Virus record (IMG/VR): IMGVR_UViG_3300027834_000005
Span: 283,233-347,232 of that record
Length of the DNA: 64,000 bases
Reading direction: 5' to 3' (one strand)
Part shown: positions 25,237 to 53,354 of the stretch, piece after piece
Numbering within the stretch: position 1 is the first letter of the stretch
Layout: each line of letters starts with the position of its first letter
Translations under genes and position numbers: made by a program
Notes under the pieces: generated by a model
The model's database searches: none
What the model was told of the DNA's origin: nothing
The model's input: only the letters and a program-made list of their open reading frames with translations

Positions 25237-25742
25237 ATGAATATGGAAGGTACTTACTGAGTAGTAACGACGCGGTTGAGTTGATGCTACACGGTAAAGA
25301 TGTTTCAGGTTGTTTTTTCCTTGACGAACAGGACGTATTAATGTATAATACGAACTGTAGTCAGGTTTTAGGTGAAACTGGACTTAATATCTACGAGAAG
25401 AATGAAACATCCTTTGAGGACTTTCATGCTGAGCAAGTCAATAAGTGGAATATCCCTTGGGAGTACCAAATACTTGATATCAAACATCATATAATGAATT
25501 TATGTGATGGTCAAGAAGAAATTGACAGAGTTACTCATGAGATGGAGCTATTTGAGAAATTTAATTTACTTAATATGCTTAGGTTCATGAAATACTTCGT
25601 AGATACCATGAGAAAAGAAAGAACAGTGTGGGGCGTCGGACGTGGCTCTAGTGTATCCGTTTATACTTTGTATTTAATGGGCGTGCATAGGGTTGACAGT
25701 ATCAAGTACAACTTAGACTGTAAAGAATTTTTTAAGGAATAG
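25215..25742 (+). CDS. Stand-alone fragment homologous to DNA polymerase III alpha (DnaE)
   Basis: RVTHEMELF...MKYFVD...VWGVGRGSSVSVYTLYLMGVHRVDSIKYNL matches DnaE GxGRGS..GS...Y.L.IT.VDP..Y.L; ends before PDxD. Confidence 0.75.
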   Translation: METNENLDEYGRYLLSSNDAVELMLHGKDVSGCFFLDEQDVLMYNTNCSQVLGETGLNIYEKNETSFEDFHAEQVNKWNIPWEYQILDIKHHIMNLCDGQEEIDRVTHEMELFEKFNLLNMLRFMKYFVDTMRKERTVWGVGRGSSVSVYTLYLMGVHRVDSIKYNLDCKEFFKE

Positions 25743-29770: not shown

Positions 29771-29778
29771 GATAAATA
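29771..29778 (+). promoter_or_regulatory. Late promoter motif
   Basis: GATAAATA 26 nt upstream of ATG 29805, at the start of the structural cluster. Confidence 0.6.
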
Positions 29779-39943: not shown

Positions 39944-41040
39944 CCGACATTAATACGCCAGATGGCAGCGGTAGAATAGACGGGGTTGATAAAAATCCTA
40001 AAGCTACGCCGAGCACTATCACCCATGCTTTTGGGAAAAATATGAACTCTTCTTCAGAGAAAAATCTAATCCTTATTACCGGCTTTACTGGATCAGGTAC
40101 TGCCACTGGTTACGTAGGGCTTTATCGTTTTAATACTTACGCTAATGATAGCGAAATATATGACATTACGAGTACCGGAGAAGAAGGTTTAAGTCGTCAA
40201 GGTAATACAACGATGTCAGTAGACGGTACTGTTTGTGCGATAGTAAACAGACCCTCGACTTCACATTATGTTAATATGTATAGGACTGAAGATGACTGGG
40301 AAACATTTACTGATATTGCGATTAACACGGGAATCACAAATCTTTCATATACTCCTATCATTGGGTGTTCTGGTAACGGAGAGTTTATGTGCGTTGCAGT
40401 CCAAAGAGAAATTAGAATATATCAATGGGATGGCATAAGTGATTGGGTTTATAGAGATAACATAATAACTGGTCACACAGCTACTACTTATAATTACGCT
40501 ATTAGTTTATCTAATGACGGATCTAAACTACTTTATTCTTGGCATTATGGTGATGGCGGCTCCAGCCATAGTACAGACGTACGATCTATTAGTGCTGTCG
40601 GTATAATCGGCGGTGCTGAAGAAAATAGCATGTTTAACAAAACGATAACAATGGCGTATGAAGGTGACTATGGATATAGATATTCCTCTGGGAAATTATA
40701 CGTGAGTGACTTTTCTATTTTTAATGGTGGTGAGGTACTAGCGTACGATACTCTACAGTTGTCAGGGTCACCTATGGAAAGTACCGAAATCGTAAAGGGG
40801 AATTACAGTATTCCGCTTATATCAATAAAAGTTGGAACTGAAATACACGTACTTAGTCCAGCCGACACAGGGACCGCTCCTGACTGGTCAAATGTGTCTC
40901 TAGTGGACGTTATACCAATGGATGATTTCCCTCCAACTATATCGTCGTATTCATGGGAGATTATTAGTGACGGACTTCTGATGTTACGGTATGAAGAATC
41001 ATCTAGCGTGTATAAATTAATTAAAATTTACTATAAATAG
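39940..41040 (+). CDS. Beta-propeller-like protein, paralogue 3 of 3
   Basis: MTDINTPDGS start; YSIPLIS...SPADTG. Confidence 0.65.
   Translation: MTDINTPDGSGRIDGVDKNPKATPSTITHAFGKNMNSSSEKNLILITGFTGSGTATGYVGLYRFNTYANDSEIYDITSTGEEGLSRQGNTTMSVDGTVCAIVNRPSTSHYVNMYRTEDDWETFTDIAINTGITNLSYTPIIGCSGNGEFMCVAVQREIRIYQWDGISDWVYRDNIITGHTATTYNYAISLSNDGSKLLYSWHYGDGGSSHSTDVRSISAVGIIGGAEENSMFNKTITMAYEGDYGYRYSSGKLYVSDFSIFNGGEVLAYDTLQLSGSPMESTEIVKGNYSIPLISIKVGTEIHVLSPADTGTAPDWSNVSLVDVIPMDDFPPTISSYSWEIISDGLLMLRYEESSSVYKLIKIYYK
41032..41039 (+). promoter_or_regulatory. T4-type late promoter
   Basis: TATAAATA 45 nt upstream of ATG 41085. Confidence 0.6.
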
Positions 41041-41084: not shown

Positions 41085-43988
41085 ATGAGTAAGCCAGTAG
41101 CAGATCTAATCTTCGGTGAGGGATCAACAAATATCATTTTAAAGAAGCCATGGAGTCCATCGACTGGACTGTTTCCTACAAGTTTTTCAGAGGGATTCGT
41201 ATATATTGCAGAAGACGATGGCGTAGTAAATGCTGAAGAATTCACTGAAGGTGATTCCATAATATATAAGGATGGAGCTTGGATAAGATTTGGTTCTGCG
41301 TCAGGTGGTGGAGGTGTAGCGTTAGAGACATACACCCCAACGACTACAGACGTGTATAATCCACCATCACCTGTGACCGATGGCACTTACAATGGTAAAT
41401 CTGGAGCTAAAGTTGTTACCTATTATGGCACTGAACTAGCTTATTACCCAGCACCACCAATAAATGCTAATTTCTCAGTTACGGGCAATACTCTGTCTGT
41501 GAATAATGGTTCTAATACTGATGGCATAGCTGTATTATGTACAGACGACGCCGAGTATCCTCCGATTACAATCGACGTGCCTGTTGCCGCTTATTTCAGT
41601 ATCAATGTCCCAACTATAACTAACACCTATAACGTAGACGTTATGTTCGGCCCTAAGATGGACGGGTTTGATGGGACTGCGATTATGGGAGCATACTCAA
41701 TGGCTTCTGCTGTAATTAATGTTAGTAGTGCTGGCGGTACATTCGCTGGTAGTCCGTTTGGTGCAATAACGGATCAGGTAGGTGACATAACTACGTTTAC
41801 CGGAGTTAATAATTTTGGTGTGAAATATACACTGAGAGCAGACGAAACGATGGACGTGGAAGTGTATCAGGAAGATATGAGTACTCCGGTATTAACATTT
41901 ACTATAATCGAAACTTACTCTCATTATTACGGTGAACTAGATGAATTGGCAATACGCAAAGGTACGTACGGTATTAGCTTATTCCTTAACTCTGATAATA
42001 GTGAAACTTTTGTAGATCCTACCTTTGAGGTAGTTAATTTTATAGATGTTCCTGTGTCTGCAATAAGTGGTGCTCAAGCTCACTGGAATGGTGAAGGTAC
42101 TGTTTCTACTAATGACCCAATTCCATCTGAGAAATATTCTAAGATTCTAGAACTAGTATCTCCTCCAGCCTCTTCGGATTTCATAGATGGCGAGATAGTT
42201 ATTACCGACGAGGTTGGTGATGTTTCTACCTTATCTAGATCTATAACGGGCGTGTACACTCCACTCATAGTTAACGACGTTGCGACACCACCAGATGGTT
42301 CTTATAACGGAACTTTCTTCGAGATCGGCATGGTGGAAAATACTACCGGAATTCTTAACATTGGAAATTTTGAAGCTGTCGAGGGAGATGTGTTTGGTAT
42401 AAGTCCAGACGGAACAGTCACTCGTGGTTTTGCATCATCTGAAGTAGAAGAGCTATCATCTGTTGTTGATGGGAGAGGTTTCGGACAAGTAGTAAATGTT
42501 ACTAACTCTAATGACCTTATCACAACTAATACATCGATAGGTAACACTCATGAATTTACATACCGTAGACCAATATCTTCTATTAAAACCGACAATAAAG
42601 AAGCCTACACTACTCTGAATTACTATGGCAGAATGGAAGGTGACAACGCAACGTCAGATATAAATGACTGGGAGTTAGACAAATATTTTGATGTGTTCAA
42701 TGGTATAGATATTTTAAGCTCAGATGGATCTAATGATGCTAATGGTGTAAATAATAGTACTGGTAAGACTGTGTATAGGTGGGAAGGTAAGCCAATGCTT
42801 AATATTCCTGTTTTCAACAATACTTTCTTGAGTGAGAATACCAACGATAGTAGTGGAGTAGATCTAGTGTCTGGTTCAAGTACTGATGTTATAACCAATA
42901 AAGGGATTGTCATTGGTGATAACAACCACGTGAATTCTTATAACTTCATAAACCTACTTAATGGTGCTATCAAGGGCGAATCTGTTAATTTCCAACACAT
43001 AACAGATAATACTACTGCGTCAGATTATACAAGCTATAGTAATGTAACCACTACGACTGATGGGTCTGGGACAGGCTTGACATTAGATGTTGGTGCTTTA
43101 AATGGGCTTTATAAGATTAACTATTATCAGGACTATGGAAGTGATTATGTCGATGGGGATACTATTACAGTTTCGGCAGCGCAATTGGATGGCTCTAATG
43201 ATTTCGTTTTTAAGATATATAATACTGTGAATGGTAAACCAACGAGTAGTAATGCTGATGGTGGATATATTCCTATTCAAACAACAACTACTGCCGAGGA
43301 TGTATATCCGTACGTAGAGGCAAATTTATCAGGAGGCGGTTCTAGTGTGCAAGCTAGAATAAAAGCTTCTGGCGGTTCTTATACGATAGATCACTGGGTA
43401 AATAAAGGTACTGGTCTTTCAATTGGTAGCACGGCGACGTTCTCAGCTGGAAGTTTAGATGGTTCTAATGATTTTGTTATTGAAGTGGCGGATACTGTTG
43501 ATGCTACGGACACTAGAAGAATGACATGGGGTAAGGATAACTTCATTGGTGGTTATATAACAGTCCCAACTGGAGTTTCACTGATCATCGATTGTCAGGG
43601 ATACAATAATGAAACTACTACTAATACTTTTCAGGGTAATGGTAATGTTACCCTAAATAATGTTGGTAAAGGATCTAACATTCCGACTCCATCTTTAACG
43701 GGTATATTTACTGTAAATTATACAGAAGATGCGACTGGAGTTCCAAGTGATACTTGGGTTACTAAGTCTGGTAATTTTACTACTGATTCTGATGAAACTT
43801 ATATACTTGATAGTAGTCTCACTGTTACTGCTGGAACACACTCAGATGGCACTGTACTTAAGTTTTTAATTAAGCAAGACCCCGCGACGTTTATTATGTC
43901 ATTTAGTGGTTTTGGCGTAACTATAAACCCAGCGTATCGTGACTACATAACACTGACTAAGGTCAATGGACTTTGGTATAAGTCATAA
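41085..43988 (+). CDS. Large fibre/appendage protein A
   Basis: 967 aa, Thr/Ser/Gly-rich; N-terminal 70 aa paralogous to 44846..47971; GSGTGLTLDV...YGSDY..GDTITV repeats. Confidence 0.65.
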   Translation: MSKPVADLIFGEGSTNIILKKPWSPSTGLFPTSFSEGFVYIAEDDGVVNAEEFTEGDSIIYKDGAWIRFGSASGGGGVALETYTPTTTDVYNPPSPVTDGTYNGKSGAKVVTYYGTELAYYPAPPINANFSVTGNTLSVNNGSNTDGIAVLCTDDAEYPPITIDVPVAAYFSINVPTITNTYNVDVMFGPKMDGFDGTAIMGAYSMASAVINVSSAGGTFAGSPFGAITDQVGDITTFTGVNNFGVKYTLRADETMDVEVYQEDMSTPVLTFTIIETYSHYYGELDELAIRKGTYGISLFLNSDNSETFVDPTFEVVNFIDVPVSAISGAQAHWNGEGTVSTNDPIPSEKYSKILELVSPPASSDFIDGEIVITDEVGDVSTLSRSITGVYTPLIVNDVATPPDGSYNGTFFEIGMVENTTGILNIGNFEAVEGDVFGISPDGTVTRGFASSEVEELSSVVDGRGFGQVVNVTNSNDLITTNTSIGNTHEFTYRRPISSIKTDNKEAYTTLNYYGRMEGDNATSDINDWELDKYFDVFNGIDILSSDGSNDANGVNNSTGKTVYRWEGKPMLNIPVFNNTFLSENTNDSSGVDLVSGSSTDVITNKGIVIGDNNHVNSYNFINLLNGAIKGESVNFQHITDNTTASDYTSYSNVTTTTDGSGTGLTLDVGALNGLYKINYYQDYGSDYVDGDTITVSAAQLDGSNDFVFKIYNTVNGKPTSSNADGGYIPIQTTTTAEDVYPYVEANLSGGGSSVQARIKASGGSYTIDHWVNKGTGLSIGSTATFSAGSLDGSNDFVIEVADTVDATDTRRMTWGKDNFIGGYITVPTGVSLIIDCQGYNNETTTNTFQGNGNVTLNNVGKGSNIPTPSLTGIFTVNYTEDATGVPSDTWVTKSGNFTTDSDETYILDSSLTVTAGTHSDGTVLKFLIKQDPATFIMSFSGFGVTINPAYRDYITLTKVNGLWYKS

Positions 43989-44785
43989 TGAAGTTAGCTA
44001 TAATGAATAGGTTTGGTATGGGAGTTGTTATCTTGAATACACAAGATAACAGCTTGAAAAAAACCAAGCATTCTTTTCCTCAAGATGGTATTGGTGGCGG
44101 AATGATGAAAGACGGAATTCTGCATTGGTGCTCCAACAGGGGAATCAATACGGAGGACGGTATAAAACATAAAGCTAGGTTTGGCTCCCCTCATTCACTT
44201 ATAGAGCATGGCGGTGATTTCGTGGTATCAAATACGACTGAAAATAACGTCATGAATCATAAAGGTGAAGAAATATACTATCCTACGTTCTTAGAACGCG
44301 ACTGCACAAAAGACTATATACATCTTAATGATTGCATCAGTGTCGATGGCAGATTGATGTTATCTTCTCTTAGTAAGCGCACTTATTGGAGAGATAACTT
44401 CACTGACGGTGGACTGTGGTATGGCGATGACGTTAATAATGGCGCTACTGTGTATATCCCCCATACTCCATGTGAGTATGAAGGGAGAATTTACGTGTTA
44501 GAGACAGGAAGTGGTTCGCTGTTGTCGTTCAATAAAAATCTTGGCGATAAGAAGATTGAACTTATCAATTTCAAGGGCTTCCTACGAGGCTTAATAATGA
44601 AAGATGGGCATGCTTACATAGCGTCCTCCGCTTTCGATCCAAATAGAAGCTTTGCTAAAATACATAACTGCCATAGGCTGAAAAGTAGTTATGGTAGAAT
44701 ATATAAGGTAAACATGTCTAACGGACATAGAGAAATTATATACGAATCCGAAGGTGCGGACATATCCTCTATATGTGAAGCTTAA
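43988..44785 (+). CDS. DUF4915 / TIGR03032-like beta-propeller protein
   Basis: PTF...DYIHLN...DG...LS...WR...DGG...PHTP..YEG.IY.LETGSG.L...GFLRGL matches the family pattern. Confidence 0.75.
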   Translation: MKLAIMNRFGMGVVILNTQDNSLKKTKHSFPQDGIGGGMMKDGILHWCSNRGINTEDGIKHKARFGSPHSLIEHGGDFVVSNTTENNVMNHKGEEIYYPTFLERDCTKDYIHLNDCISVDGRLMLSSLSKRTYWRDNFTDGGLWYGDDVNNGATVYIPHTPCEYEGRIYVLETGSGSLLSFNKNLGDKKIELINFKGFLRGLIMKDGHAYIASSAFDPNRSFAKIHNCHRLKSSYGRIYKVNMSNGHREIIYESEGADISSICEA

Positions 44786-44798
44786 TCCCCTACATTAT

Positions 44799-44840
44799 AA
44801 TCTCCTTTCTTCGATAAATAGAGGTAAGAAACAGGAGATT
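44799..44840 (+). promoter_or_regulatory. RBS-sequestering hairpin with a late promoter in its loop
   Basis: AATCTCC+TTTCTT pairs with AAGAAA+GGAGATT (2-nt bulge); loop contains GATAAATA (44813-44820); SD AGGAG lies in the 3' arm. Confidence 0.7.
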
Positions 44841-44845
44841 ACTAA

Positions 44846-47800
44846 ATGACATCCATTAACGACATATATTACGGTCAAAATACGACCAATGTTATTTTCA
44901 AGAAAACATGGAGTCCTTCCACAGGTTTATACCCAACTGACATGACAGAAGGTATCATGTACATTGCTGAAGATGACGGCACTGTTGGCGTTGAGAACTA
45001 CGTAACAGATGACGCTATTTTTTATAAGGACACATCATGGATAAGGCTTGGTTCTGCTGATAGCGGATCTCCGGTTGCTGTGTCCGATACTCCCCCTCCT
45101 GCCCCAGAAGAAGGTGACTTGTGGTGGGATTCTTCTGTGGATAACAGTGGTCCGTTATACACGTGGAATGGCACGGAATGGGCAACGTCTAGCGGCGGCA
45201 CATCTATAGAAAACTGGACACCTGTGCCTATTAGTGTGCCTATCATAGGTACTATTGATGTTAGTGGAAACACCACTATCACGCCTAATGCTACAGGAGC
45301 AACATTCACTAATACTGCGAACGGAGGCTTTCCAGCCACATCGTTCTCAGTAGATGACGTATTCGAGATGAGTACTGTTGAGACTGGCATGTATTTCAAA
45401 TTATCTAATATGTATGATGCCAGTAGTGGTGGCGGCGGATATAACGGATTCACAGACAGTACGGCTGATTGGTATACTATGGGTGGAGCCTTATGTGGTT
45501 TATATCTTGACGCAACTGGTACTGGAGACTTCGATGGTAATTTACAGATTTCAGTTGGTAGTTACTTGGAAGGGACATCAGAAGGTGATGCGCTAAACGT
45601 GACAATTCCTTTTGCAAGCATACAAGATAAAGAATTATGTATATCCGTTTACCATGATAACGTAGACACCATCACTGTTAATTTATATAGCGAGGATACT
45701 GTTAACGTTCCAATTCATACATTTTCATACACGTTGGTGAGTCTGTCATTGCAGGACGCGGTAGATTCTATTACAAGGTCATTTAGTACTGTGTATCAAG
45801 ATACTAATACTTTTTCACCTACAGCAATAGGAACGCATTATACAGTTCCTACAGTGGTGCATTCCAATGTAACTTTGTTCTCAGATGTAAAAGTTGATCC
45901 TACATCATATCCTGTAGTTACTGAAAATACTCAATTTAGAGTTAATGCATTGGCAGCTCCGTTATACGCAGAAGATATAGACGTGACATTAAAAAATGGT
46001 TACTTAACATCATTTAGTGCGGCTGGGGCATTGGAAACTGCATCTCCTGAACTTACTGCGAACGAGATTAATGCTCAGTTGGCTACATTTGCGTCAACTA
46101 CCGGAAATAATACTTTTACTGGAGACAACACGTTCAGTGGCGAATTTGTAGATAGCAAGCACTTAGAAAGTAATGGAACAGATACGTTCGATCTAGACAA
46201 TCACACTAAATATTTATTTAAGATTAGGAGTAACTCAACAGCAGCAACAGTTAATTTGCCAGATATTAGTCCTTCTAATAACCAACTTCTTCCTTATGTA
46301 GAAATAACGGCAGTCGGTAAATTAGGACAAGTGACAATAGATGATCCTTTAGTGTCTGAGAACTTCTTCATTAACGGTGTTGATTCTGGTGCAAGTACAT
46401 ATGTGATTACGTCCGGCGCGAAAGTGTTACTGGTTAAAGGACCTACTTCGATTAGTAGTGATAGATGGCATGTTATTGACATGGCTGCCGTTGGTAGTGG
46501 CGGTATGTCAACTGTCATTTTAAATAGTGATGACGGTAGTGTGACTAATGCTGATGTGGGTACGAAGTACGTACAGATACAATCAACAGTAGGTGCGTTG
46601 CCATCTACCTTTATTTTACCTAACACTGCTGATAATGGTGAGCAAATAATACTTGAGGTAAGTGATAACTATGAAACTCGCATTCAATGTGCTAGCACAG
46701 ACATTAAGATTTTCGGTATAGATTCAGATACTACTATTCCAGCTGGGCTTGGAAGTACATTCAAAACAGAAAACCAAGCAATATATACGTTCACGTATAA
46801 TGTTGCGAAGTCTTGGTGGGAGTGTATTATATCTGGTGGTGTTCTTGATTTTATCGGTAAGTTCGGAACAAACGTTGATCTTGATTTGGCAGGCGGAAAC
46901 GTAGTAATTTCTAGTGGTCAGCCTACGGGTGAACTTAGTCTTAGTGTACAAACATCGGCGATGAACATGTCATCACCATCCGACTTAGCAATAGCTACTA
47001 AGAAATATGTTGATGATAATGCCGTTGGTGGTTTTGATAACACATCCCTTGCATCGTATAGTGCAGCCGGAGATATTGTTCTTAATGCTAATACAGCTAT
47101 TGGTGACCAGATAACATTAAATGCTACTAACTTTGGTGGCGAAGTAAATATAAATTCTTACTCCGCATTAGATGTGAATGTATCTAACGGTTTAATAAAT
47201 TTCACAAGTGAAGATATGTTACTGGGGTTAACCCCGTCATCAAGCAATGCTTCTAAAATATTCTTTAAAAACGATGGCATCGATTTAGGTAATTACGGTT
47301 ATGTATCGGCAGCGGGAGATAGTACGTCCGCCGGTATTAGACTTTCTAGTAACACAGAACAGAGCTTCATGGATATCAGAGGTGATAGAATTGTAATGGA
47401 TTCTGATAGTGACGTGGTTATTGTTAGCGGTGGCGGATCAGGTCAAGGTAAGTTGAGTTTCTTAGATTTACTAAACAGCCAAGCTGGATTTGTAGGTGCA
47501 TATTCGTCTTCTGCTGGCGGCATTCAGATTAGCTCTAATAACTCGGCACATTCATTAAACATAACTAATAGCGGCGGTGTATCTGTTAGTGCTGATCCCG
47601 TAAACCCACTTAACGTTGCAACTAAACAGTACGTAGACCATGGTAATATGAAAGCTGTAACTGTGACTTTTGCGTCAACAGACACAACTGTGAATGTTGG
47701 GACAGCTGTGCCTAGTAACGCTTTAGTCGTGTCTTGCAAGATAAACATAACTACCGCATTTGATGACGTAGCAGCAACATTGACAGTTGGTAATTCAACG

Positions 47801-47971
47801 ACTAATGATGGCATATCAGCGACTGTTAGTAGTGACCCATCCACATTAGGCTTATACGCAAATGATTCTTTATTTGACGTATTAGGAAATGGACAAATAC
47901 AAATATTCGTAAGTGCCGGTACTGCTACTGTTGGAGCAGGAAGAGTTCTAGTAGAATACTACATCCCATAA
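44846..47971 (+). CDS. Large fibre/appendage protein B
   Basis: 1041 aa; N-terminus paralogous to protein A; P..P.EGDLWWDS unit; ATKxYVD motifs. Confidence 0.65.
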   Translation: MTSINDIYYGQNTTNVIFKKTWSPSTGLYPTDMTEGIMYIAEDDGTVGVENYVTDDAIFYKDTSWIRLGSADSGSPVAVSDTPPPAPEEGDLWWDSSVDNSGPLYTWNGTEWATSSGGTSIENWTPVPISVPIIGTIDVSGNTTITPNATGATFTNTANGGFPATSFSVDDVFEMSTVETGMYFKLSNMYDASSGGGGYNGFTDSTADWYTMGGALCGLYLDATGTGDFDGNLQISVGSYLEGTSEGDALNVTIPFASIQDKELCISVYHDNVDTITVNLYSEDTVNVPIHTFSYTLVSLSLQDAVDSITRSFSTVYQDTNTFSPTAIGTHYTVPTVVHSNVTLFSDVKVDPTSYPVVTENTQFRVNALAAPLYAEDIDVTLKNGYLTSFSAAGALETASPELTANEINAQLATFASTTGNNTFTGDNTFSGEFVDSKHLESNGTDTFDLDNHTKYLFKIRSNSTAATVNLPDISPSNNQLLPYVEITAVGKLGQVTIDDPLVSENFFINGVDSGASTYVITSGAKVLLVKGPTSISSDRWHVIDMAAVGSGGMSTVILNSDDGSVTNADVGTKYVQIQSTVGALPSTFILPNTADNGEQIILEVSDNYETRIQCASTDIKIFGIDSDTTIPAGLGSTFKTENQAIYTFTYNVAKSWWECIISGGVLDFIGKFGTNVDLDLAGGNVVISSGQPTGELSLSVQTSAMNMSSPSDLAIATKKYVDDNAVGGFDNTSLASYSAAGDIVLNANTAIGDQITLNATNFGGEVNINSYSALDVNVSNGLINFTSEDMLLGLTPSSSNASKIFFKNDGIDLGNYGYVSAAGDSTSAGIRLSSNTEQSFMDIRGDRIVMDSDSDVVIVSGGGSGQGKLSFLDLLNSQAGFVGAYSSSAGGIQISSNNSAHSLNITNSGGVSVSADPVNPLNVATKQYVDHGNMKAVTVTFASTDTTVNVGTAVPSNALVVSCKINITTAFDDVAATLTVGNSTTNDGISATVSSDPSTLGLYANDSLFDVLGNGQIQIFVSAGTATVGAGRVLVEYYIP

Positions 47972-47982
47972 GGAAATGAAAC

Positions 47983-49491
47983 ATGACAAAGAGATATGAT
48001 TTAAGCGGAATTGGCAGTTCCATGGAATTAGGTAAAAATGGTCCACTGATAACAGATAATAATGGCTCAGTGGAGATTGATGGTAATAAATTATTGGGGG
48101 AATCCGAATCTTCCCCTGTGTTTAGTTCGGGCACATTAGGGGCGATTTCATTAACTGTTAATGTGGACCCAACCAAATTCGATGTGTCAATCGACAATGC
48201 GGTATTTGTAGACCACACGTATGGCAGTGCAACGCCACTTACCTATACTGGTGCACAATCTTTTACTGCGGTGACGTCTCCGCTTATTGGTTCAGAAAAT
48301 TCTACTTTTGTAGGTATAAATTCATCAGGCACATTAGTCTATAAAAATGTACAATATACTCCCGTAGAAAGAAGAACTATTGTATATATTGGTGTGCTGG
48401 TACACACTGATAATGTGAATATATCATCGGCAATAACAACACCAACGCAAGCGCAAGATAACGATCAGCTGCTTATAGACTTAGTGGATGTGATAGGTGC
48501 AGTAAATGTGTCTGGGAATAGTTTTGAACCAGTAGATACTTCGCTAGCATTAAAAAAGACCGCAGGATCATCTTTTGGGAGATCGGTAGGATATGAATCC
48601 ACACCGTCCAGCCCGAATATAGATGCATCTCCTGAAATATCCCCTCTGACATTCTTCTCTAACTATAGGGATGCCACCACTGGGGTGACTATTGGTGTGG
48701 AAAATGTTGTCGATCCTAATTTCTGGGATGATGGAACCGGCACGCTAAATGCTTTAGCTAATAACCGAGTTGTAGCACATAGAATTACTTATTTCGCTTC
48801 TGATGATAGTGTCGTTATTCAATATGGGCAAAATGAATATTTAGATATGTCAGCAGCTGAATCTGGATACATATCTGAAGTATTTGAAGAGAGGAATAAT
48901 CTAAGTGCGGGTATATTCAGAGGGTGGTTATTGCTTACTGAAGGCATTACCAATTTAACAGCCGCATTCGGTAGTGGGGCTGCAAAGTTTATAGAATCGA
49001 ATAAATTTGGCGGTAGCGCTTCTGCTGGTGACCATTTTGATCCGTCATTGTCGCAATCTATAACTGGCGCATGGGACTTTACGCAAGAAATTCTTTTGGC
49101 AGCAGATCCTACTTCAGTACTAGGTGTGGCCACTAAGCAATATGTAGATGCTAACGTGGGTACTGGTTTGGAGAATGTGACAGTGTCCCCAACTACATCA
49201 GGAGTCATATCCTATACTGGCTCCACATCAGGAACTCATATAATAAATTTAACTGGTGATGGAACTTTAACTATGGATGATGCGCCAATAACCATACAGC
49301 CTAATGTTACTACGCTTTCTTTCTTTGTGAAACCCGCCGCCCACGTATTAGGGTTTAGTGGTAACATTGACTGGGGTGATGCTGGCCTTCCAGATTTAAC
49401 AGCTAATAAGTTGACGTCATTCACCTTGATATCTTTCGGTAATTCTGCGTCATGGTTAGGAACTGCCGGTAACAGCGGGTATGTAGCGTAA
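47983..49491 (+). CDS. Virion structural/appendage protein
   Basis: 502 aa; ADPTSVLGVATKQYVD motif shared with the fibre genes. Confidence 0.6.
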   Translation: MTKRYDLSGIGSSMELGKNGPLITDNNGSVEIDGNKLLGESESSPVFSSGTLGAISLTVNVDPTKFDVSIDNAVFVDHTYGSATPLTYTGAQSFTAVTSPLIGSENSTFVGINSSGTLVYKNVQYTPVERRTIVYIGVLVHTDNVNISSAITTPTQAQDNDQLLIDLVDVIGAVNVSGNSFEPVDTSLALKKTAGSSFGRSVGYESTPSSPNIDASPEISPLTFFSNYRDATTGVTIGVENVVDPNFWDDGTGTLNALANNRVVAHRITYFASDDSVVIQYGQNEYLDMSAAESGYISEVFEERNNLSAGIFRGWLLLTEGITNLTAAFGSGAAKFIESNKFGGSASAGDHFDPSLSQSITGAWDFTQEILLAADPTSVLGVATKQYVDANVGTGLENVTVSPTTSGVISYTGSTSGTHIINLTGDGTLTMDDAPITIQPNVTTLSFFVKPAAHVLGFSGNIDWGDAGLPDLTANKLTSFTLISFGNSASWLGTAGNSGYVA

Positions 49492-52400
49492 TGATCATAC
49501 CAACTAACCTCAGAAAAATTGACAAAGTACCTAAATACCCAGTTGGGTGGTCACTGTCTCGTAATTCTACAGCACTGACCATGCAGTACACAGAAGTGCA
49601 AGCTGAAGAGCCTGTTTATGAGAGAATAATACAATCGCCAATGGCCTTTCAAGATATTCAACCTTACTCAAGTGGATTAACCGACGCTACTATACAACCG
49701 ACATATGCATCGGTTGTGGCTGATATAGAGGCGCTTGATGCAACATATACTAATGTAGTCGTTGATGATATTTCAACTATCACTGGTGCTACTGTGTTGC
49801 CTAGCGGACGTAAAATGTTAACTGTTCGGATAAATGATGATGGTGTAAAACCTATCATCTGTTTACACACTTGCACACATGGAGGAGAGAATCACTCCTT
49901 CACTGGGGTGTTAAGTTTTATTGATCATTACTTAACATCTAATGATGCACTTAGTGTGTGGTTGAGAGAAACTGTGTCACTAGTATGGTTAGCAATACCG
50001 AATCCAGACGGATTATTCAGTGATAATAGACGTAATGATAATAACATAAACCTTAACAGGAATTACCCTTATTTCTGGGATTACGCGGCTGACCCTGATA
50101 AAGGTGCTGCTCCCCTTGACCAAAACGAAACAGCTAATATGATAAACTTCCTAACAGTGGAGATGATGGGGCGAATAATTTCATTCCTTGATATCCATGG
50201 ATGGTTCTCTAGGTCAACTTATGGGTTCCTGACAGATCAGATATGGGAAGGTGATATAAGAGCTTTGAAACAACAACGTGCTGCATACCTATACATGAAA
50301 TCTATCATGGATAAAAGAGACTGGGCTTCTGAATTCACCATTGTCAACGCACTTCCTACACCAGTGGAAAGACGTTCATCACGTAAACCCTACATATCTT
50401 ATGCGATACGAAAACATTGCAAGTCAACCGCATGGACAGGCCAATTCGAATACTCTCACCAAGAGAATGTTGGTGTAGGCGGAACTGCTGTGCTTGATGC
50501 TATCACAGGCGTGTGTATGGCTGCTCGTGATGGGCTTGTTTCAGAGAGCATCGGCGTTGTTAGTACGGGATTATTTGCGCCTACAGATATCGTCAATAAT
50601 AATTCTCACTTTGACGACGCATGGAATGTTTCTGAGAATAGACCGCCTTGGTTTAAGTATGAATCTCTAAGTGTTCAGAATAATACATTGGTCAATCCTC
50701 ATTATACAGAAACTCAGGTAGTTATTAATAGGCCTCTTTCATCAAGCTGGCCTATTCTTTTCACCAATGCTGGTGAGACAGTTAATGCAGATCCCCTGTT
50801 GGAAACAGGTGGTCATGTTTATATTGTTGGTGGGGAAGTTTCTTCTGGAACTTACACGAATGATTTCTATCGTGAGCAGCTTGTCCAACCAGAACCACCG
50901 CAGATTGGCGATAACAACTATGGGATTTATTTACCTGAAATAGAGCAAGAACAATTACCGAATTTACCCTACTCAGCTAAAGGTGTTAAATTAGCAAATG
51001 ATGGAACGTATATCTATGCATTTGGTGGATTTGATGGGACCTACCACGCCGAAATCTATCGTATTGCTATTGCTGGCGTAGACACAAATAGTTGGACTCT
51101 AGTTCACACTATGACTTCATATGGTGGTGAAGGTTTAAATCGACACAGTATGGATTTCTGGAATGGTAATCTTGTGATCACTGGTGGCAGAACATCTATT
51201 GGTTATGAAGATAAAACAATTTTGGTTGATGTGTCCACGTGGTCTGAGACTATTATTGTAAGATCATCAAATGATATTGATCCATTCTTTTCTGCGCGTG
51301 GCTGGCATAGCACCGTGTTAGTGGGTGATCTTTTATATGTTATTGGTGGTTGGACAGGAACAACAACGCTATTAAGCGTATATGAAATAAACCTAGTGAC
51401 ACGTGGAAGGTTTTACCGTCCATTGCCTTCTGCGAGAAGACAAGCTTCTGCGGCATATTCTGCAGACACTGATAAGATTTATGTTATTGGTGGTTGTTCT
51501 GGTTCTACAACCACGCCAACATATCTTGATGCTTTAGAATTTGATAGAGCGACGGATACTTGGTCTGATTATGTACATTCACTTGATACATTCGTAGATG
51601 AGGACGGTGATACGGTTACGATTGATCCAATGTTAAGATTGAATCCAATCATGTATTACAACCCGTTGTCTTATCAGTTAATATTCGCTGGTGGTGAAAG
51701 TGCAGTGGACGTTTCTACCGCAACAGTGTATGAGATTTTACTATCATCAAGTCTTGTGTCTTTACGTGAAACTAATGATGCGAACTACGGTTTGATTAGG
51801 CCAAATTCTATATTTCCGTCAGTTGAAGGTGAAGTGTATGTATTAAACATTGCAGCCGAAAGGTTAGATGCTATTGACCCTCAAGTGAACGCCTATTTGA
51901 GACCTTGTATCTACTCTGGTAACTGGGCAACTCCTATACGTAAGAACAGGCTAGGATATAGTGTGCCTCCTAATAAAGGCGTCCATATATATTCTATTCC
52001 TGTACAAGCGCATGCAGGATTTGATCCTGAGATACGTGGGTTCTTACGTCATTACGGAAGTGGCACGCGTGTTGTGTTAGGCGCAATGCAAATTACAAAA
52101 GGGCAACTACACGGGACACTTATTCCCGAAACAGGTAAGGCGTCAGACGTAGTGACTGTGTCTTTTGATAATATGGTAGATACGAATAACGAAGCATATG
52201 GTGTTATGTCACCTATGTGGGGTAGTCAGCAGGCTACTAATGGAGACTTAACTGCCATAGACTTTACTGTGGATGGAGCTAATGATCTTGATCTTCTATC
52301 CCTCACATATTCTGCTACTGCGGATGGCGTTTATACAGATCCAAACTCATATATTGATTTTTCCCCTAATGGAAACTTCACGTTGCGCTGGACTGAGAAT

Positions 52401-52628
52401 GCAACCCCTCACACTCACGTATTTACTACGGTAGAGTTAAACCATGACAGGTATGCACCGGCATGGAGAAAAGATGTATTTCATTGGAGGCTAAGATATT
52501 CGGGGGCTGATTTAGTTTTCGATTTGTGGTTTTATAATGAGATGCAGACTGTAAATCTTGGAGCAATAACTAGTGATATAACAGGATTTACGATAGACGG
52601 CGCAAATGCCGTATGTAAAGTTCAATAA
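49491..52628 (+). CDS. M14 zinc carboxypeptidase - Kelch propeller fusion protein
   Basis: THGGE (HxxE), NPDG, RRN..NINLNRNYP, LDIHG, FEY; six Kelch blades (YIVGG, YAFGG, VITGG, YVIGG, YVIGG, IFAGG). Confidence 0.85.
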   Translation: MIIPTNLRKIDKVPKYPVGWSLSRNSTALTMQYTEVQAEEPVYERIIQSPMAFQDIQPYSSGLTDATIQPTYASVVADIEALDATYTNVVVDDISTITGATVLPSGRKMLTVRINDDGVKPIICLHTCTHGGENHSFTGVLSFIDHYLTSNDALSVWLRETVSLVWLAIPNPDGLFSDNRRNDNNINLNRNYPYFWDYAADPDKGAAPLDQNETANMINFLTVEMMGRIISFLDIHGWFSRSTYGFLTDQIWEGDIRALKQQRAAYLYMKSIMDKRDWASEFTIVNALPTPVERRSSRKPYISYAIRKHCKSTAWTGQFEYSHQENVGVGGTAVLDAITGVCMAARDGLVSESIGVVSTGLFAPTDIVNNNSHFDDAWNVSENRPPWFKYESLSVQNNTLVNPHYTETQVVINRPLSSSWPILFTNAGETVNADPLLETGGHVYIVGGEVSSGTYTNDFYREQLVQPEPPQIGDNNYGIYLPEIEQEQLPNLPYSAKGVKLANDGTYIYAFGGFDGTYHAEIYRIAIAGVDTNSWTLVHTMTSYGGEGLNRHSMDFWNGNLVITGGRTSIGYEDKTILVDVSTWSETIIVRSSNDIDPFFSARGWHSTVLVGDLLYVIGGWTGTTTLLSVYEINLVTRGRFYRPLPSARRQASAAYSADTDKIYVIGGCSGSTTTPTYLDALEFDRATDTWSDYVHSLDTFVDEDGDTVTIDPMLRLNPIMYYNPLSYQLIFAGGESAVDVSTATVYEILLSSSLVSLRETNDANYGLIRPNSIFPSVEGEVYVLNIAAERLDAIDPQVNAYLRPCIYSGNWATPIRKNRLGYSVPPNKGVHIYSIPVQAHAGFDPEIRGFLRHYGSGTRVVLGAMQITKGQLHGTLIPETGKASDVVTVSFDNMVDTNNEAYGVMSPMWGSQQATNGDLTAIDFTVDGANDLDLLSLTYSATADGVYTDPNSYIDFSPNGNFTLRWTENATPHTHVFTTVELNHDRYAPAWRKDVFHWRLRYSGADLVFDLWFYNEMQTVNLGAITSDITGFTIDGANAVCKVQ

Positions 52629-52902: not shown

Positions 52903-52931
52903 TTGACTTAACCTCAAATGTCCCCTATAAT
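52903..52931 (+). promoter_or_regulatory. sigma70 promoter
   Basis: TTGACT-17 bp-TATAAT. Confidence 0.7.
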
Positions 52932-52955
52932 CATTCTGAATTTAGGGGACACCTC

Positions 52956-53354
52956 ATGCCAAAGACAGAAACAGAAAAACAACAAACCTACTTAAAAAAT
53001 ATGGTCCTTAGTCTTATAGGTGCTATCATATCTGCCGTGTGCCTTGCATTCATCCTAGGACGTAACGACGGTCTCCGTAACGCAAAACTAGACGTAGACA
53101 CAGAGAAAGCAAAATATATCATTCTAGCCGGAGAATACCAATCTCTTAAAGATGAGAATGCATTGTACTATAATGCTATTCGTAGATGGGATGCATCTAC
53201 CGACGAAAACTTCGTTATGAGTGTTGACTACCTTAATACCCTTGATAAGAAGTTCGAATCCTCTTCTGTAATAAAAAAGAAAACAACTATTGAAAACATG
53301 TCTAAAGTGTGTGAAGATATTACCTCACTTAAAAAACAAGGCATGCTTAAATGA
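52956..53354 (+). CDS. Membrane-anchored hypothetical protein
   Basis: TM at residues ~17-34 then helical region. Confidence 0.55.
   Translation: MPKTETEKQQTYLKNMVLSLIGAIISAVCLAFILGRNDGLRNAKLDVDTEKAKYIILAGEYQSLKDENALYYNAIRRWDASTDENFVMSVDYLNTLDKKFESSSVIKKKTTIENMSKVCEDITSLKKQGMLK

What the first reader, a model, noticed from the sequence alone, without database searches (positions are those of the whole stretch)
44799..44848. Promoter-in-a-hairpin switch: read-through mRNA hides the RBS, the gene's own late mRNA exposes it
Seen: a 13-bp stem (AATCTCC/GGAGATT plus TTTCTT/AAGAAA) buries the SD AGGAG of the 1041-aa fibre gene, and its loop holds GATAAATA. A transcript from that promoter lacks the 5' arm. 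Established: T4 uses this design for e, soc, 49 and I-TevI to block translation from early read-through RNA. Inference: here the upstream genes appear late too, so the device may set fibre stoichiometry or insulate fibre B from the fibre A operon, a different use of the mechanism.
Basis: partly seen in the sequence, partly recalled or inferred. Interest (0 to 1): 0.7.

Follow-up and report, generated by a model that had tools for sequence, protein, structure and literature searches.

The report
Late promoter inside an RBS-hiding hairpin
In an uncultured marine jumbo phage, the short spacer before a tail-fibre gene can fold into an RNA hairpin that hides the ribosome-binding site and has the gene's own T4-type late promoter in its loop. 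This is a trick already known from phage T4, so only transcripts started at that promoter should be well translated, but no RNA data exist to prove it.

Summary
An 8-9 bp perfect stem (44798-44806 / 44833-44841) plus a 5-6 bp inner stem encloses GATAAATAG (44813-44821) and pairs the SD AGGAG (44833-44837). A 4-bp extension pairs the AUG (44846).

GATAAATA is a genuine promoter-like motif of this 347-kb phage:
- It is about 6-7x enriched upstream of genes.
- It precedes the major capsid, tail sheath, tail tube and large terminase genes.
- The genome encodes a gp55-like late sigma factor.

By T4 geometry the start site falls at about 44826, the first base of the 3' arm, so the short transcript lacks the 5' arm. 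Predicted RBS occlusion (unpaired 0.25 in the long RNA, 0.60 in the short) matches the T4 lysozyme (gene e) control (0.18, 0.63).

The hairpin alone is only modestly significant (z -1.98; shuffle p about 0.03). Two independent lines support it:
- The nearest relative (51% protein identity) has an unalignable spacer that folds the same way (z -4.6).
- All six genes of 526 with a 9-nt or longer perfect anti-RBS complement carry a promoter motif (p = 5e-5), and in five of them the predicted start lies between the arms.

More distant relatives keep the promoter but not the hairpin. No RNA data exist. The "late-late insulation / stoichiometry" idea is plausible but untested.

Verdict: a new member of a known kind.

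The parts
41032..41040 (+). Upstream late-promoter motif TATAAATAG, 45-46 nt before the fibre A gene. It is the likely source of read-through RNA that would contain the hairpin.
   Evidence: It is not itself in a hairpin (z +0.96).
41085..43988 (+). Fibre A, 967 aa. It is a paralogue of fibre B over roughly the first 75-85 N-terminal residues.
   Evidence: HMM of the N-terminus, E = 5e-29.
43988..44785 (+). 265-aa DUF4915 protein. Its start overlaps the fibre A stop (ATGA), and its own stop lies 13 nt before the hairpin.
   Evidence: PF16261, E = 3e-15. Homologues sit in the same position in L002 and L004.
44798..44811 (+). 5' arm of the hairpin (anti-SD TAATCTCCT plus TTCTTC). It is present only in RNA started upstream.
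44813..44821 (+). Late-promoter motif GATAAATAG in the hairpin loop. It fits the genome consensus GATAAATAG-nn-GTAA.
   Evidence: The motif is conserved before homologous fibre genes in L002, L004, L015, L016, L017 and L021.
44826..44826 (+). Predicted transcription start, the A six nt after the motif. This is inferred, not mapped.
   Evidence: T4 geometry, with mapped 5' ends at gene e described in PMC3014915. The A at this position is the most conserved downstream base, in 26 of 35 sites.
44826..44841 (+). 3' arm of the hairpin, containing the SD AGGAG (44833-44837).
44846..47971 (+). Fibre B, 1041 aa, a putative tail fibre or receptor-binding protein and the regulated gene.
   Evidence: The N-terminal domain plus a fibre-type repeat is found in more than 1000 proteins. 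The C-terminus hits phrog_4042. Atlas leads are DUF2793, Mtd_N and gp9/10 (weak).
47983..52628 (+). Two downstream genes with no promoter motif of their own. They encode a 502-aa tail-fibre-like protein and a 1045-aa peptidase M14 + Kelch protein. They are probably co-transcribed from the 44813 promoter.

Best explanation
This is a T4-type promoter-in-hairpin translational gate. RNA that enters from upstream contains both arms. The likely sources are the late promoters at 41032 and 29771, and possibly early promoters further up. That RNA folds into a 13-14 bp hairpin that pairs the SD and, through a short extension, the AUG of the fibre B gene, so 30S subunits bind poorly. RNA polymerase carrying the phage's gp55-like late sigma factor recognises GATAAATAG in the loop region and starts at about 44826. 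That transcript begins with the 3' arm, has a 20-nt unstructured leader and is translated. Fibre B, and probably the two genes behind it, are therefore made essentially only from their own promoter. Shown here: the hairpin, the motif's genome-wide promoter-like behaviour, the sigma factor gene, the geometry, and recurrence of the design in this genome and in the nearest relative. Inferred: the start site, that read-through RNA exists, and that translation differs between the two RNAs. Which upstream transcripts are being silenced (late or early), and why, remains open.
For: (1) Structure.
(2) Promoter: GATAAATA is 7.3x enriched in the 100 nt before ORF starts. Of its 51 copies, 29 lie in the 9.7% of the genome that is non-coding. 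About 35 oriented copies sit a median of 26 nt before starts. They precede the MCP, tail sheath, tail tube, TerL, head-tail adaptor, baseplate hub and other virion proteins. A gp55-like sigma factor is encoded (phrog_12791, E = 3e-62) next to a gp47 homologue, as in T4.
(3) Same metric as the T4 gene e positive control: cross-pairing 12.5 against 13.9, and RBS unpaired 0.25 (long) and 0.60 (short) against 0.18 and 0.63.
(4) The hairpin lies wholly in the spacer, starting 13 nt after the upstream stop codon, so ribosomes on the upstream ORF should not melt it.
(5) No terminator separates the upstream late promoter from the hairpin.
(6) The nearest relative, L002, has an unalignable spacer with GATAAATAT in the apical loop and 3' arm of a -28.6 kcal/mol hairpin that pairs the SD and AUG (z -4.58, 0 of 200 shuffles; RBS unpaired 0.22 against 0.84).
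(7) Genome-wide, all 6 ORFs with a perfect anti-RBS complement of 9 nt or more carry a promoter motif: 6 of 102 against 0 of 424, p = 4.7e-5. Restricted to upstream gaps of 40 nt or more it is 6 of 69 against 0 of 130, p = 0.0015. In 5 of the 6 the predicted start lies between the arms.
(8) Fibre B ranks 20th of 526 ORFs for predicted upstream-RBS pairing.
Against: No transcript data were available: only one DNA run was listed and no RNA run. The hairpin is weaker than T4 e (-10.7 against -14.0 kcal/mol at 37 C) and is only marginally better than shuffles (z -1.98; p about 0.03), which is no more than expected once among 35 promoters. The fold-based enrichment across all 35 late-promoter genes is borderline (Fisher combined p = 0.05; only 3 of 35 at p <= 0.05). 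Five more distant homologous fibre loci (L004, L015, L016, L017, L021) keep the promoter motif but do not occlude the RBS, so conservation is limited to one close relative. In L002 the arm-shuffle test itself is not significant (p = 0.10). The short transcript's SD is still predicted to be about 58% paired with coding sequence when 175 nt are folded. Homologues of gp33 and gp45 were not found. One of the three late-promoter cases with a 9-nt complement (C1:146716) sits in a divergent intergenic region where co-oriented read-through is not obvious.
Confidence: 0.6

Rival explanations
1. The complementarity is fortuitous. A pyrimidine-rich spacer happens to contain the complement of a strong SD next to a real late promoter. 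The hairpin forms weakly or not at all in vivo and has no regulatory role.
For: The z-score is only -1.98 and the shuffle p is about 0.03, which is expected once among 35 promoters. The hairpin is absent from five homologous loci that retain the promoter. The hairpin is modest at -10.7 kcal/mol.
Against: A perfect 9-nt anti-RBS complement is found at none of 424 promoter-less ORFs. The nearest relative has an independent and much stronger hairpin of the same architecture. Outer-stem probability is 0.97 in long contexts. The predicted behaviour equals that of the proven T4 e hairpin.
Confidence: 0.2
2. The hairpin is an mRNA end or processing element. It could be a 3' stabiliser of the upstream fibre A-DUF4915 message or a nuclease entry site that separates two late messages, and the occlusion of the SD would be incidental.
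For: It sits in the spacer directly after an operon. In L002 the extended stem of about 30 bp is long enough for a double-strand-specific nuclease. T4 messages are extensively processed (PMC3014915).
Against: There is no U-tract and the stem is not GC-rich, so it is not an intrinsic terminator. The 3' arm is exactly the SD and the extension reaches the AUG, and the same holds in L002. The genome-wide association is with RBS complements and promoters, not with operon ends. There is no Rfam match.
Confidence: 0.1
3. The inverted repeat acts on DNA. It would be an operator for a dimeric regulator that flanks the late promoter, as in I-TevI autorepression at its late promoter, or it would affect promoter opening.
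For: The arms bracket the -10-like element symmetrically. PMC2988022 describes protein operators that overlap T4 late promoters.
Against: The arm sequences differ completely between the window and L002, while complementarity and inclusion of the RBS are kept. The other instances in the genome have unrelated arm sequences, so no common binding site exists.
Confidence: 0.05

Closest known systems
Phage T4 gene e (lysozyme) late-promoter/hairpin control (McPheeters et al. 1986, as reviewed in PMC3014915)
   Same: An anti-SD 5' arm, a TATAAATA-type late promoter inside the stem-loop and an SD-containing 3' arm directly before the AUG. The late transcript starts inside the structure and lacks the 5' arm. 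Folded here with the same tools, the T4 hairpin gives -14.0 kcal/mol, z -2.8, and RBS unpaired 0.18 (long) and 0.63 (short). The window's values are nearly identical.
   Different: In T4 the silenced RNAs are early read-through transcripts and the purpose is to avoid premature lysis. Here the visible upstream promoters are late-type and the gene is structural. The promoter's first base is G rather than T. The loop is longer (11-14 nt against 8) and the stem somewhat weaker. T4 has experimental proof and this locus has none.
T4 and T4-like homing endonuclease genes I-TevI, I-TevII, I-TevIII, segB, and mobE of Aeh1 (PMC2988022)
   Same: A late (or middle) promoter placed so that its transcript lacks the RBS-sequestering 5' strand. 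The genes are embedded in long polycistronic units. This genome also has an HNH endonuclease gene (C1:203730) with the same layout.
   Different: Those genes are selfish elements whose translation is restricted in time. Some add protein autorepression at the promoter. Fibre B is a virion gene.
T4 soc and gene 49 inhibitory translation-initiation structures (PMC3014915)
   Same: The SD and/or AUG are sequestered in long transcripts and a late promoter is adjacent. In gene 49 the promoter-like AATAAATA itself forms the 5' arm, as at C1:196437 in this genome.
   Different: The arm and promoter registers differ. Both genes lie in early regions of T4.
Pseudomonas jumbo phage PA5oct (Arenbergviridae), the closest cultured relative by capsid protein
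   Same: Its MCP is 81.7% identical. [quoted passage not shown]
   Different: Only sigma70-like promoters (TATAATA / TTGAC) were reported for PA5oct. No late motif or promoter-in-hairpin device is described there. The fibre gene has no tblastn match in any deposited phage.

Membership tests
T4-type promoter-in-hairpin translational control (e / soc / 49 / I-TevI class) | A T4-type late promoter (TATAAATA-like -10 element read by a gp55-family sigma factor) immediately upstream of the RBS | tested here: met
   GATAAATAG lies at 44813-44821, 25 nt before the ATG. The motif is enriched 6-7x upstream of genes and precedes virion genes. A gp55-like sigma factor is encoded. Promoter activity itself was not measured.
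T4-type promoter-in-hairpin translational control (e / soc / 49 / I-TevI class) | A stem-loop in the longer RNA that sequesters the SD and/or the start codon | tested here: met
   A 13-14 bp stem is predicted. The SD is paired at 0.95 and the AUG at 0.82-0.96 in contexts of 200-750 nt. This is a prediction only, with no probing.
T4-type promoter-in-hairpin translational control (e / soc / 49 / I-TevI class) | The promoter's transcription start lies inside the structure, so its transcript lacks the 5' strand | tested here: inconclusive
   By the T4 spacing the start is at 44826, the first base of the 3' arm. A conserved A occurs at that position in 26 of 35 sites. No RNA run was listed for mapping.
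T4-type promoter-in-hairpin translational control (e / soc / 49 / I-TevI class) | Read-through transcripts from upstream promoters actually cover the gene | tested here: inconclusive
   An upstream late motif lies at 41032. No terminator-like site stands out in between, and no sigma70-like promoter occurs in 29.8-52.6 kb. This is compatible with the requirement but is not shown.
T4-type promoter-in-hairpin translational control (e / soc / 49 / I-TevI class) | The long RNA is poorly translated and the short RNA well translated | not testable with these tools
   Only predicted accessibility is available: 0.25 against 0.60, compared with 0.18 against 0.63 for T4 e.
T4-type promoter-in-hairpin translational control (e / soc / 49 / I-TevI class) | The architecture is kept in related phages despite sequence change | tested here: inconclusive
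   It is kept in the nearest relative L002. It is lost in L004, L015, L016, L017 and L021, which keep only the promoter. T4 gene e shows the same patchiness among relatives (PMC3014915).
Intrinsic (Rho-independent) terminator | A GC-rich stem followed directly by a U-tract | tested here: not met
   The stem is AT-rich and is followed by ACUAAAUG. The terminator scan did not report it.
Any curated RNA family (Rfam 15) | A match to a covariance model | tested here: not met
   There was no match at E <= 1 in 44300-45300.

The most novel reading that the evidence does not exclude
The hairpin is one copy of a genome-wide insulation system. In this almost unidirectional jumbo genome with few predicted terminators, internal promoters of both classes (sigma70-like early and gp55-type late) are embedded in RBS-sequestering hairpins. 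Each gene block would then be translated only from its own promoter's transcript. At the fibre locus this would uncouple two paralogous fibres that share an N-terminal attachment domain, fixing their ratio by promoter strength rather than by operon read-through. That would be a late-versus-late use not described for T4.
Probability: 0.25. Interest if true: 0.6.

Novelty: new member of a known kind. Interest (0 to 1): 0.42.

Why it matters
If the device works as predicted, it extends the T4 promoter-in-hairpin mechanism to a distant, uncultured marine jumbo phage whose capsid is PA5oct-like. It also supplies that group with a late-promoter consensus (GATAAATAG, with G rather than T at the first position). 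The device may have a wider role than delaying toxic or selfish genes. It may make translation depend on which promoter produced the RNA, even between two late units and around early-type promoters. For annotators the practical point is that transcript boundaries, not only ORFs, may decide expression in co-oriented phage genomes. For engineers it is a compact natural insulator. None of this overturns current understanding.

Tried and rejected
- **Deposited phages:** megablast and tblastn of the locus and fibre gave no match.
- **The search for related loci:** the DUF4915 protein in viral contigs gave no relative. The fibre N-terminus in JGI metagenome contigs gave none.
- **The search for homologous proteins:** neither the full fibre nor its N-terminal piece gave a further relative. 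A proper covariation test was therefore impossible, because only two hairpin-bearing sequences exist and they do not align.
- **Transcript evidence:** only one DNA run (marine metagenome) was listed, and no RNA run.
- **Terminator reading:** rejected, because there is no U-tract.
- **Known RNA family:** none.
- **Fold-based test across all 35 late-promoter genes:** only borderline (combined p = 0.05; 3 of 35 at p <= 0.05). I do not claim that every late promoter of this phage is gated.
- **Tail-sheath gene in 33 related contigs:** the promoter motif is conserved, but significant RBS pairing appears in only 5 of 33. The device is therefore sporadic there too.
- **T4 gp33 and gp45:** single-sequence searches and PF02916 found nothing in the genome. 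This is uninformative for such fast-evolving proteins.
- **PA5oct MCP upstream region:** it shows no informative motif.
- **T4 soc under my metric:** it did not behave as a clean positive control, because its hairpin lies within the short RNA as I defined it. Only gene e was used for calibration.
- **Fibre identity:** no Pfam hit, no PDB sequence hit, and Atlas hits below 0.9. "Fibre" rests on the N-terminal and repeat homology and on the neighbouring genes.
Full report
**What is at the coordinates.** The window is the last 64 kb of a 347,232-bp IMG/VR virus record that came from a marine metagenome.

Between the stop of a 265-aa ORF (44783-44785) and the ATG of a 1041-aa ORF (44846) lies a 60-nt spacer. 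Its layout is:

| Feature | Coordinates |
|---|---|
| 5' arm, (T)AATCTCCT then TTCTT(C) | 44798-44811 |
| GATAAATAG | 44813-44821 |
| 3' arm inner part, AAGAA(A) | 44826-44831 |
| 2-nt bulge | 44831-44832 |
| 3' arm outer part, AGGAGATT(A) | 44833-44841 |
| SD AGGAG, 8 nt before the ATG | 44833-44837 |
| ATG | 44846 |

The repeat finder reports a perfect 9-nt inverted repeat. RNAfold gives a 13-14 bp bipartite stem. The isolated hairpin is -10.7 kcal/mol at 37 C and -15.8 at 20 C. A 75-nt context gives -14 kcal/mol, with a 4-bp extension that pairs the AUG. In contexts of 200-750 nt the outer stem keeps probability 0.97 and the SD is 95% paired.

**Is it more than chance?** Taken alone, only modestly. 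The fold z-score is -1.98. Shuffling the 5' side gives p about 0.03, which is what one would expect once among 35 promoters.

A sharper statistic comes from perfect complements. Only 6 of 526 ORFs in the genome have a perfect complement of 9 nt or more to their RBS window within the 67 nt upstream, and fibre B is one of them.

**Is GATAAATA a promoter?**
- The genome is T4-related. It has a Gp23-type capsid protein (269 bits) that is 81.7% identical to that of Pseudomonas jumbo phage PA5oct.
- It encodes a gp55-like late sigma factor (phrog_12791, E = 3e-62; phrog_234, E = 6e-24) next to a gp47 homologue, as in T4.
- Unbiased k-mer counting shows GATAAATA 7.3x and ATAAATAG 9.1x enriched in the 100 nt before ORF starts.
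- Of 51 GATAAATA copies, 29 lie in the 9.7% of the genome that is non-coding.
- About 35 oriented NATAAATA copies sit a median of 26 nt before start codons. G occupies the first position in 22 of them. The consensus is GATAAATAG-nn-GTAA, with a conserved A (26 of 35) six nt after the motif, where T4 late transcripts start.
- The genes behind these copies include the major capsid protein, tail sheath, tail tube, large terminase, head-tail adaptor, baseplate hub and several virion proteins.
- The same motif precedes the tail-sheath gene in most of 33 distinct related contigs.
- It also precedes homologous fibre genes in six other metagenomic loci.

I regard the late-promoter identity as well supported, although no transcript was seen.

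**Geometry and calibration.** With the T4 spacing the start is at 44826, the first base of the 3' arm. That leaves a 20-nt leader without the 5' arm.

I measured two things: the expected number of base pairs between sequence 5' of the start and the RBS window, and the unpaired fraction of the RBS in long and short RNAs.

| Locus | Cross-pairing | RBS unpaired, long | RBS unpaired, short |
|---|---|---|---|
| Fibre B (window) | 12.5 | 0.25 | 0.60 |
| T4 gene e (proven case) | 13.9 | 0.18 | 0.63 |

PMC2988022 adds I-TevII, I-TevIII, segB and mobE, and notes that all such genes are late genes on long polycistronic RNAs.

**Context.**
- The 967-aa protein upstream (41085-43988) and the 1041-aa protein share their first 75-85 residues. 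"Fibre A / fibre B" is therefore a fair description of two paralogues with a common N-terminal domain.
- Fibre A has its own TATAAATAG at 41032, which is not in a hairpin.
- No sigma70-like promoter lies in 29.8-52.6 kb. The nearest are at 25321 and 52903.
- No convincing terminator lies between 41085 and 44846.
- The hairpin begins 13 nt after the upstream stop codon, so terminating ribosomes should leave it intact. This last point is an inference from the sequence.

Late read-through RNA carrying the hairpin is therefore likely. Early read-through from further upstream cannot be excluded.

**Relatives.**

| Locus | Relation to the window | Promoter motif | RBS occluded? |
|---|---|---|---|
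| L002 | Closest; 51% identity in the DUF4915 protein, 53% in the fibre N-terminus | GATAAATAT | Yes |
| L004, L015 | Same gene order; DUF4915 homologue 35% identical | Kept, 24-36 nt before the ATG | No |
| L016, L017, L021 | More distant | Kept, 24-36 nt before the ATG | No |

L002's spacer cannot be aligned with the window's. It nevertheless folds into a -28.6 kcal/mol hairpin (z -4.58, 0 of 200 shuffles). GATAAATAT sits in the apical loop and 3' arm, and the SD and AUG are paired. The RBS is 0.22 unpaired in the long RNA and 0.84 in the short.

The architecture is thus shared by two lineages with different sequences, but it is not general. T4 gene e shows the same patchy distribution among its relatives (PMC3014915). 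No further relatives were retrievable, so a formal covariation test could not be done.

**The design recurs in this genome.**
- Late-promoter genes have more upstream-RBS pairing than other genes (median 6.8 against 4.3, p = 0.02). Per-gene shuffles, however, give only a borderline combined p of 0.05.
- The perfect-complement statistic is clearer. All six ORFs with an anti-RBS complement of 9 nt or more carry a promoter motif, three late-type and three sigma70-like. That is 6 of 102 promoter-bearing ORFs against 0 of 424 others (p = 4.7e-5).
- Restricting to ORFs with upstream gaps of 40 nt or more gives 6 of 69 against 0 of 130 (p = 0.0015).
- In five of the six the predicted start lies between the arms.
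- Examples are a 16-bp case at C1:29792, and window gene 52956 behind the sigma70-like promoter at 52903.
- An HNH endonuclease gene (C1:203730) also shows the layout. It has the largest predicted gain in accessibility, 0.29 to 0.83, echoing the T4 homing-endonuclease cases.

**Conclusion.** The most likely reading (about 0.6) is a genuine T4-type promoter-in-hairpin gate, which makes fibre B translation depend on its own late promoter.

| Rival explanation | Probability |
|---|---|
| Chance complementarity | about 0.2 |
| mRNA end or processing element | about 0.1 |
| DNA operator | about 0.05 |

A broader version remains possible at about 0.25: genome-wide insulation of transcription units, at early as well as late promoters.

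This is a new member of a known kind. It is of moderate interest, mainly because it extends the mechanism and a variant late-promoter consensus to an uncultured jumbo-phage lineage.

Noticed in passing
window 52903-52958: A near-consensus sigma70-like promoter (TTGACT, 17 nt, TATAAT; -10 at 52926-52931) sits inside a hairpin. Its arms (52919-52927 / 52943-52951, 9 nt perfect) pair the SD-like AGGGGA of the gene starting at 52956, and the predicted start (~52938) lies between the arms. This is the same trick with an early-type promoter.
   Followed up: partly
genome G000:C1:29700-29795 (outside the window): The layout is a strong terminator, then a perfect TTGACA-17-TATAAT promoter whose -10 box lies in the 5' arm of a 16-bp perfect hairpin ending 2 nt before the ATG. 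The RBS is predicted 0.07 unpaired in long RNA and 0.49 in short. This is the most extreme promoter-in-hairpin case in the genome.
   Followed up: partly
genome G000:C1:203660-203735 (outside the window): An HNH endonuclease gene (166 aa) has GATAAATAC in the loop of a hairpin that pairs its start region. RBS accessibility goes from 0.29 to 0.83. This parallels T4 I-TevI, segB and mobE.
   Followed up: partly
window 41085-41340 and 44846-45100: The two large fibre-like proteins share an N-terminal domain of about 75-85 aa. The same domain heads at least a dozen metagenomic proteins of 130-1530 aa with unrelated C-termini, which suggests a common attachment module with swappable distal parts. 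Residues 55-110 match a repeat found in more than 1000 proteins.
   Followed up: partly
whole genome; window sites at 29771, 41032, 44813, 56472: The late-promoter consensus of this phage is GATAAATAG-nn-GTAA, with G rather than T4's T at the first position in 22 of 35 sites. Related contigs also use CATAAATA, AATAAATA and GCTAAATA before the tail-sheath gene.
   Followed up: yes
loci L051, L053, L054, L057-L059, L069, L098 (tail-sheath relatives): One clade of related marine phages has TTTCTCC or TTTCTC directly 5' of the late promoter, and GGAGAAA as the SD of the tail-sheath gene 50-55 nt downstream. L098 shows a different complementary pair (CTGTCTC / GAGACAG). Only 5 of 33 loci pass a shuffle test.
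   Followed up: partly
window 49491-52628: The last gene of the fibre block encodes a 1045-aa protein that combines a zinc carboxypeptidase (M14) domain with Kelch beta-propeller repeats. This is an unusual pairing for a tail-fibre operon.
   Followed up: no
window 43988-44785: A DUF4915 protein sits between the two fibre genes, with its start overlapping the fibre A stop. It keeps this position in relatives (L002 at 51% identity, L004 at 35%). It may be a fibre assembly or accessory factor.
   Followed up: no
whole record: The exact DUF4915 and fibre proteins also occur on another assembly contig of 410,284 bp, so the 347-kb record (94% complete by CheckV) may be truncated. The window ends at the record's end.
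   Followed up: no
genome G000:C1:146834-147826: The gp55-like late sigma factor is 330 aa, against 185 aa in T4, so it has an extra N-terminal region of about 125 aa. Homologues of gp33 and gp45 were not detectable by sequence.
   Followed up: partly
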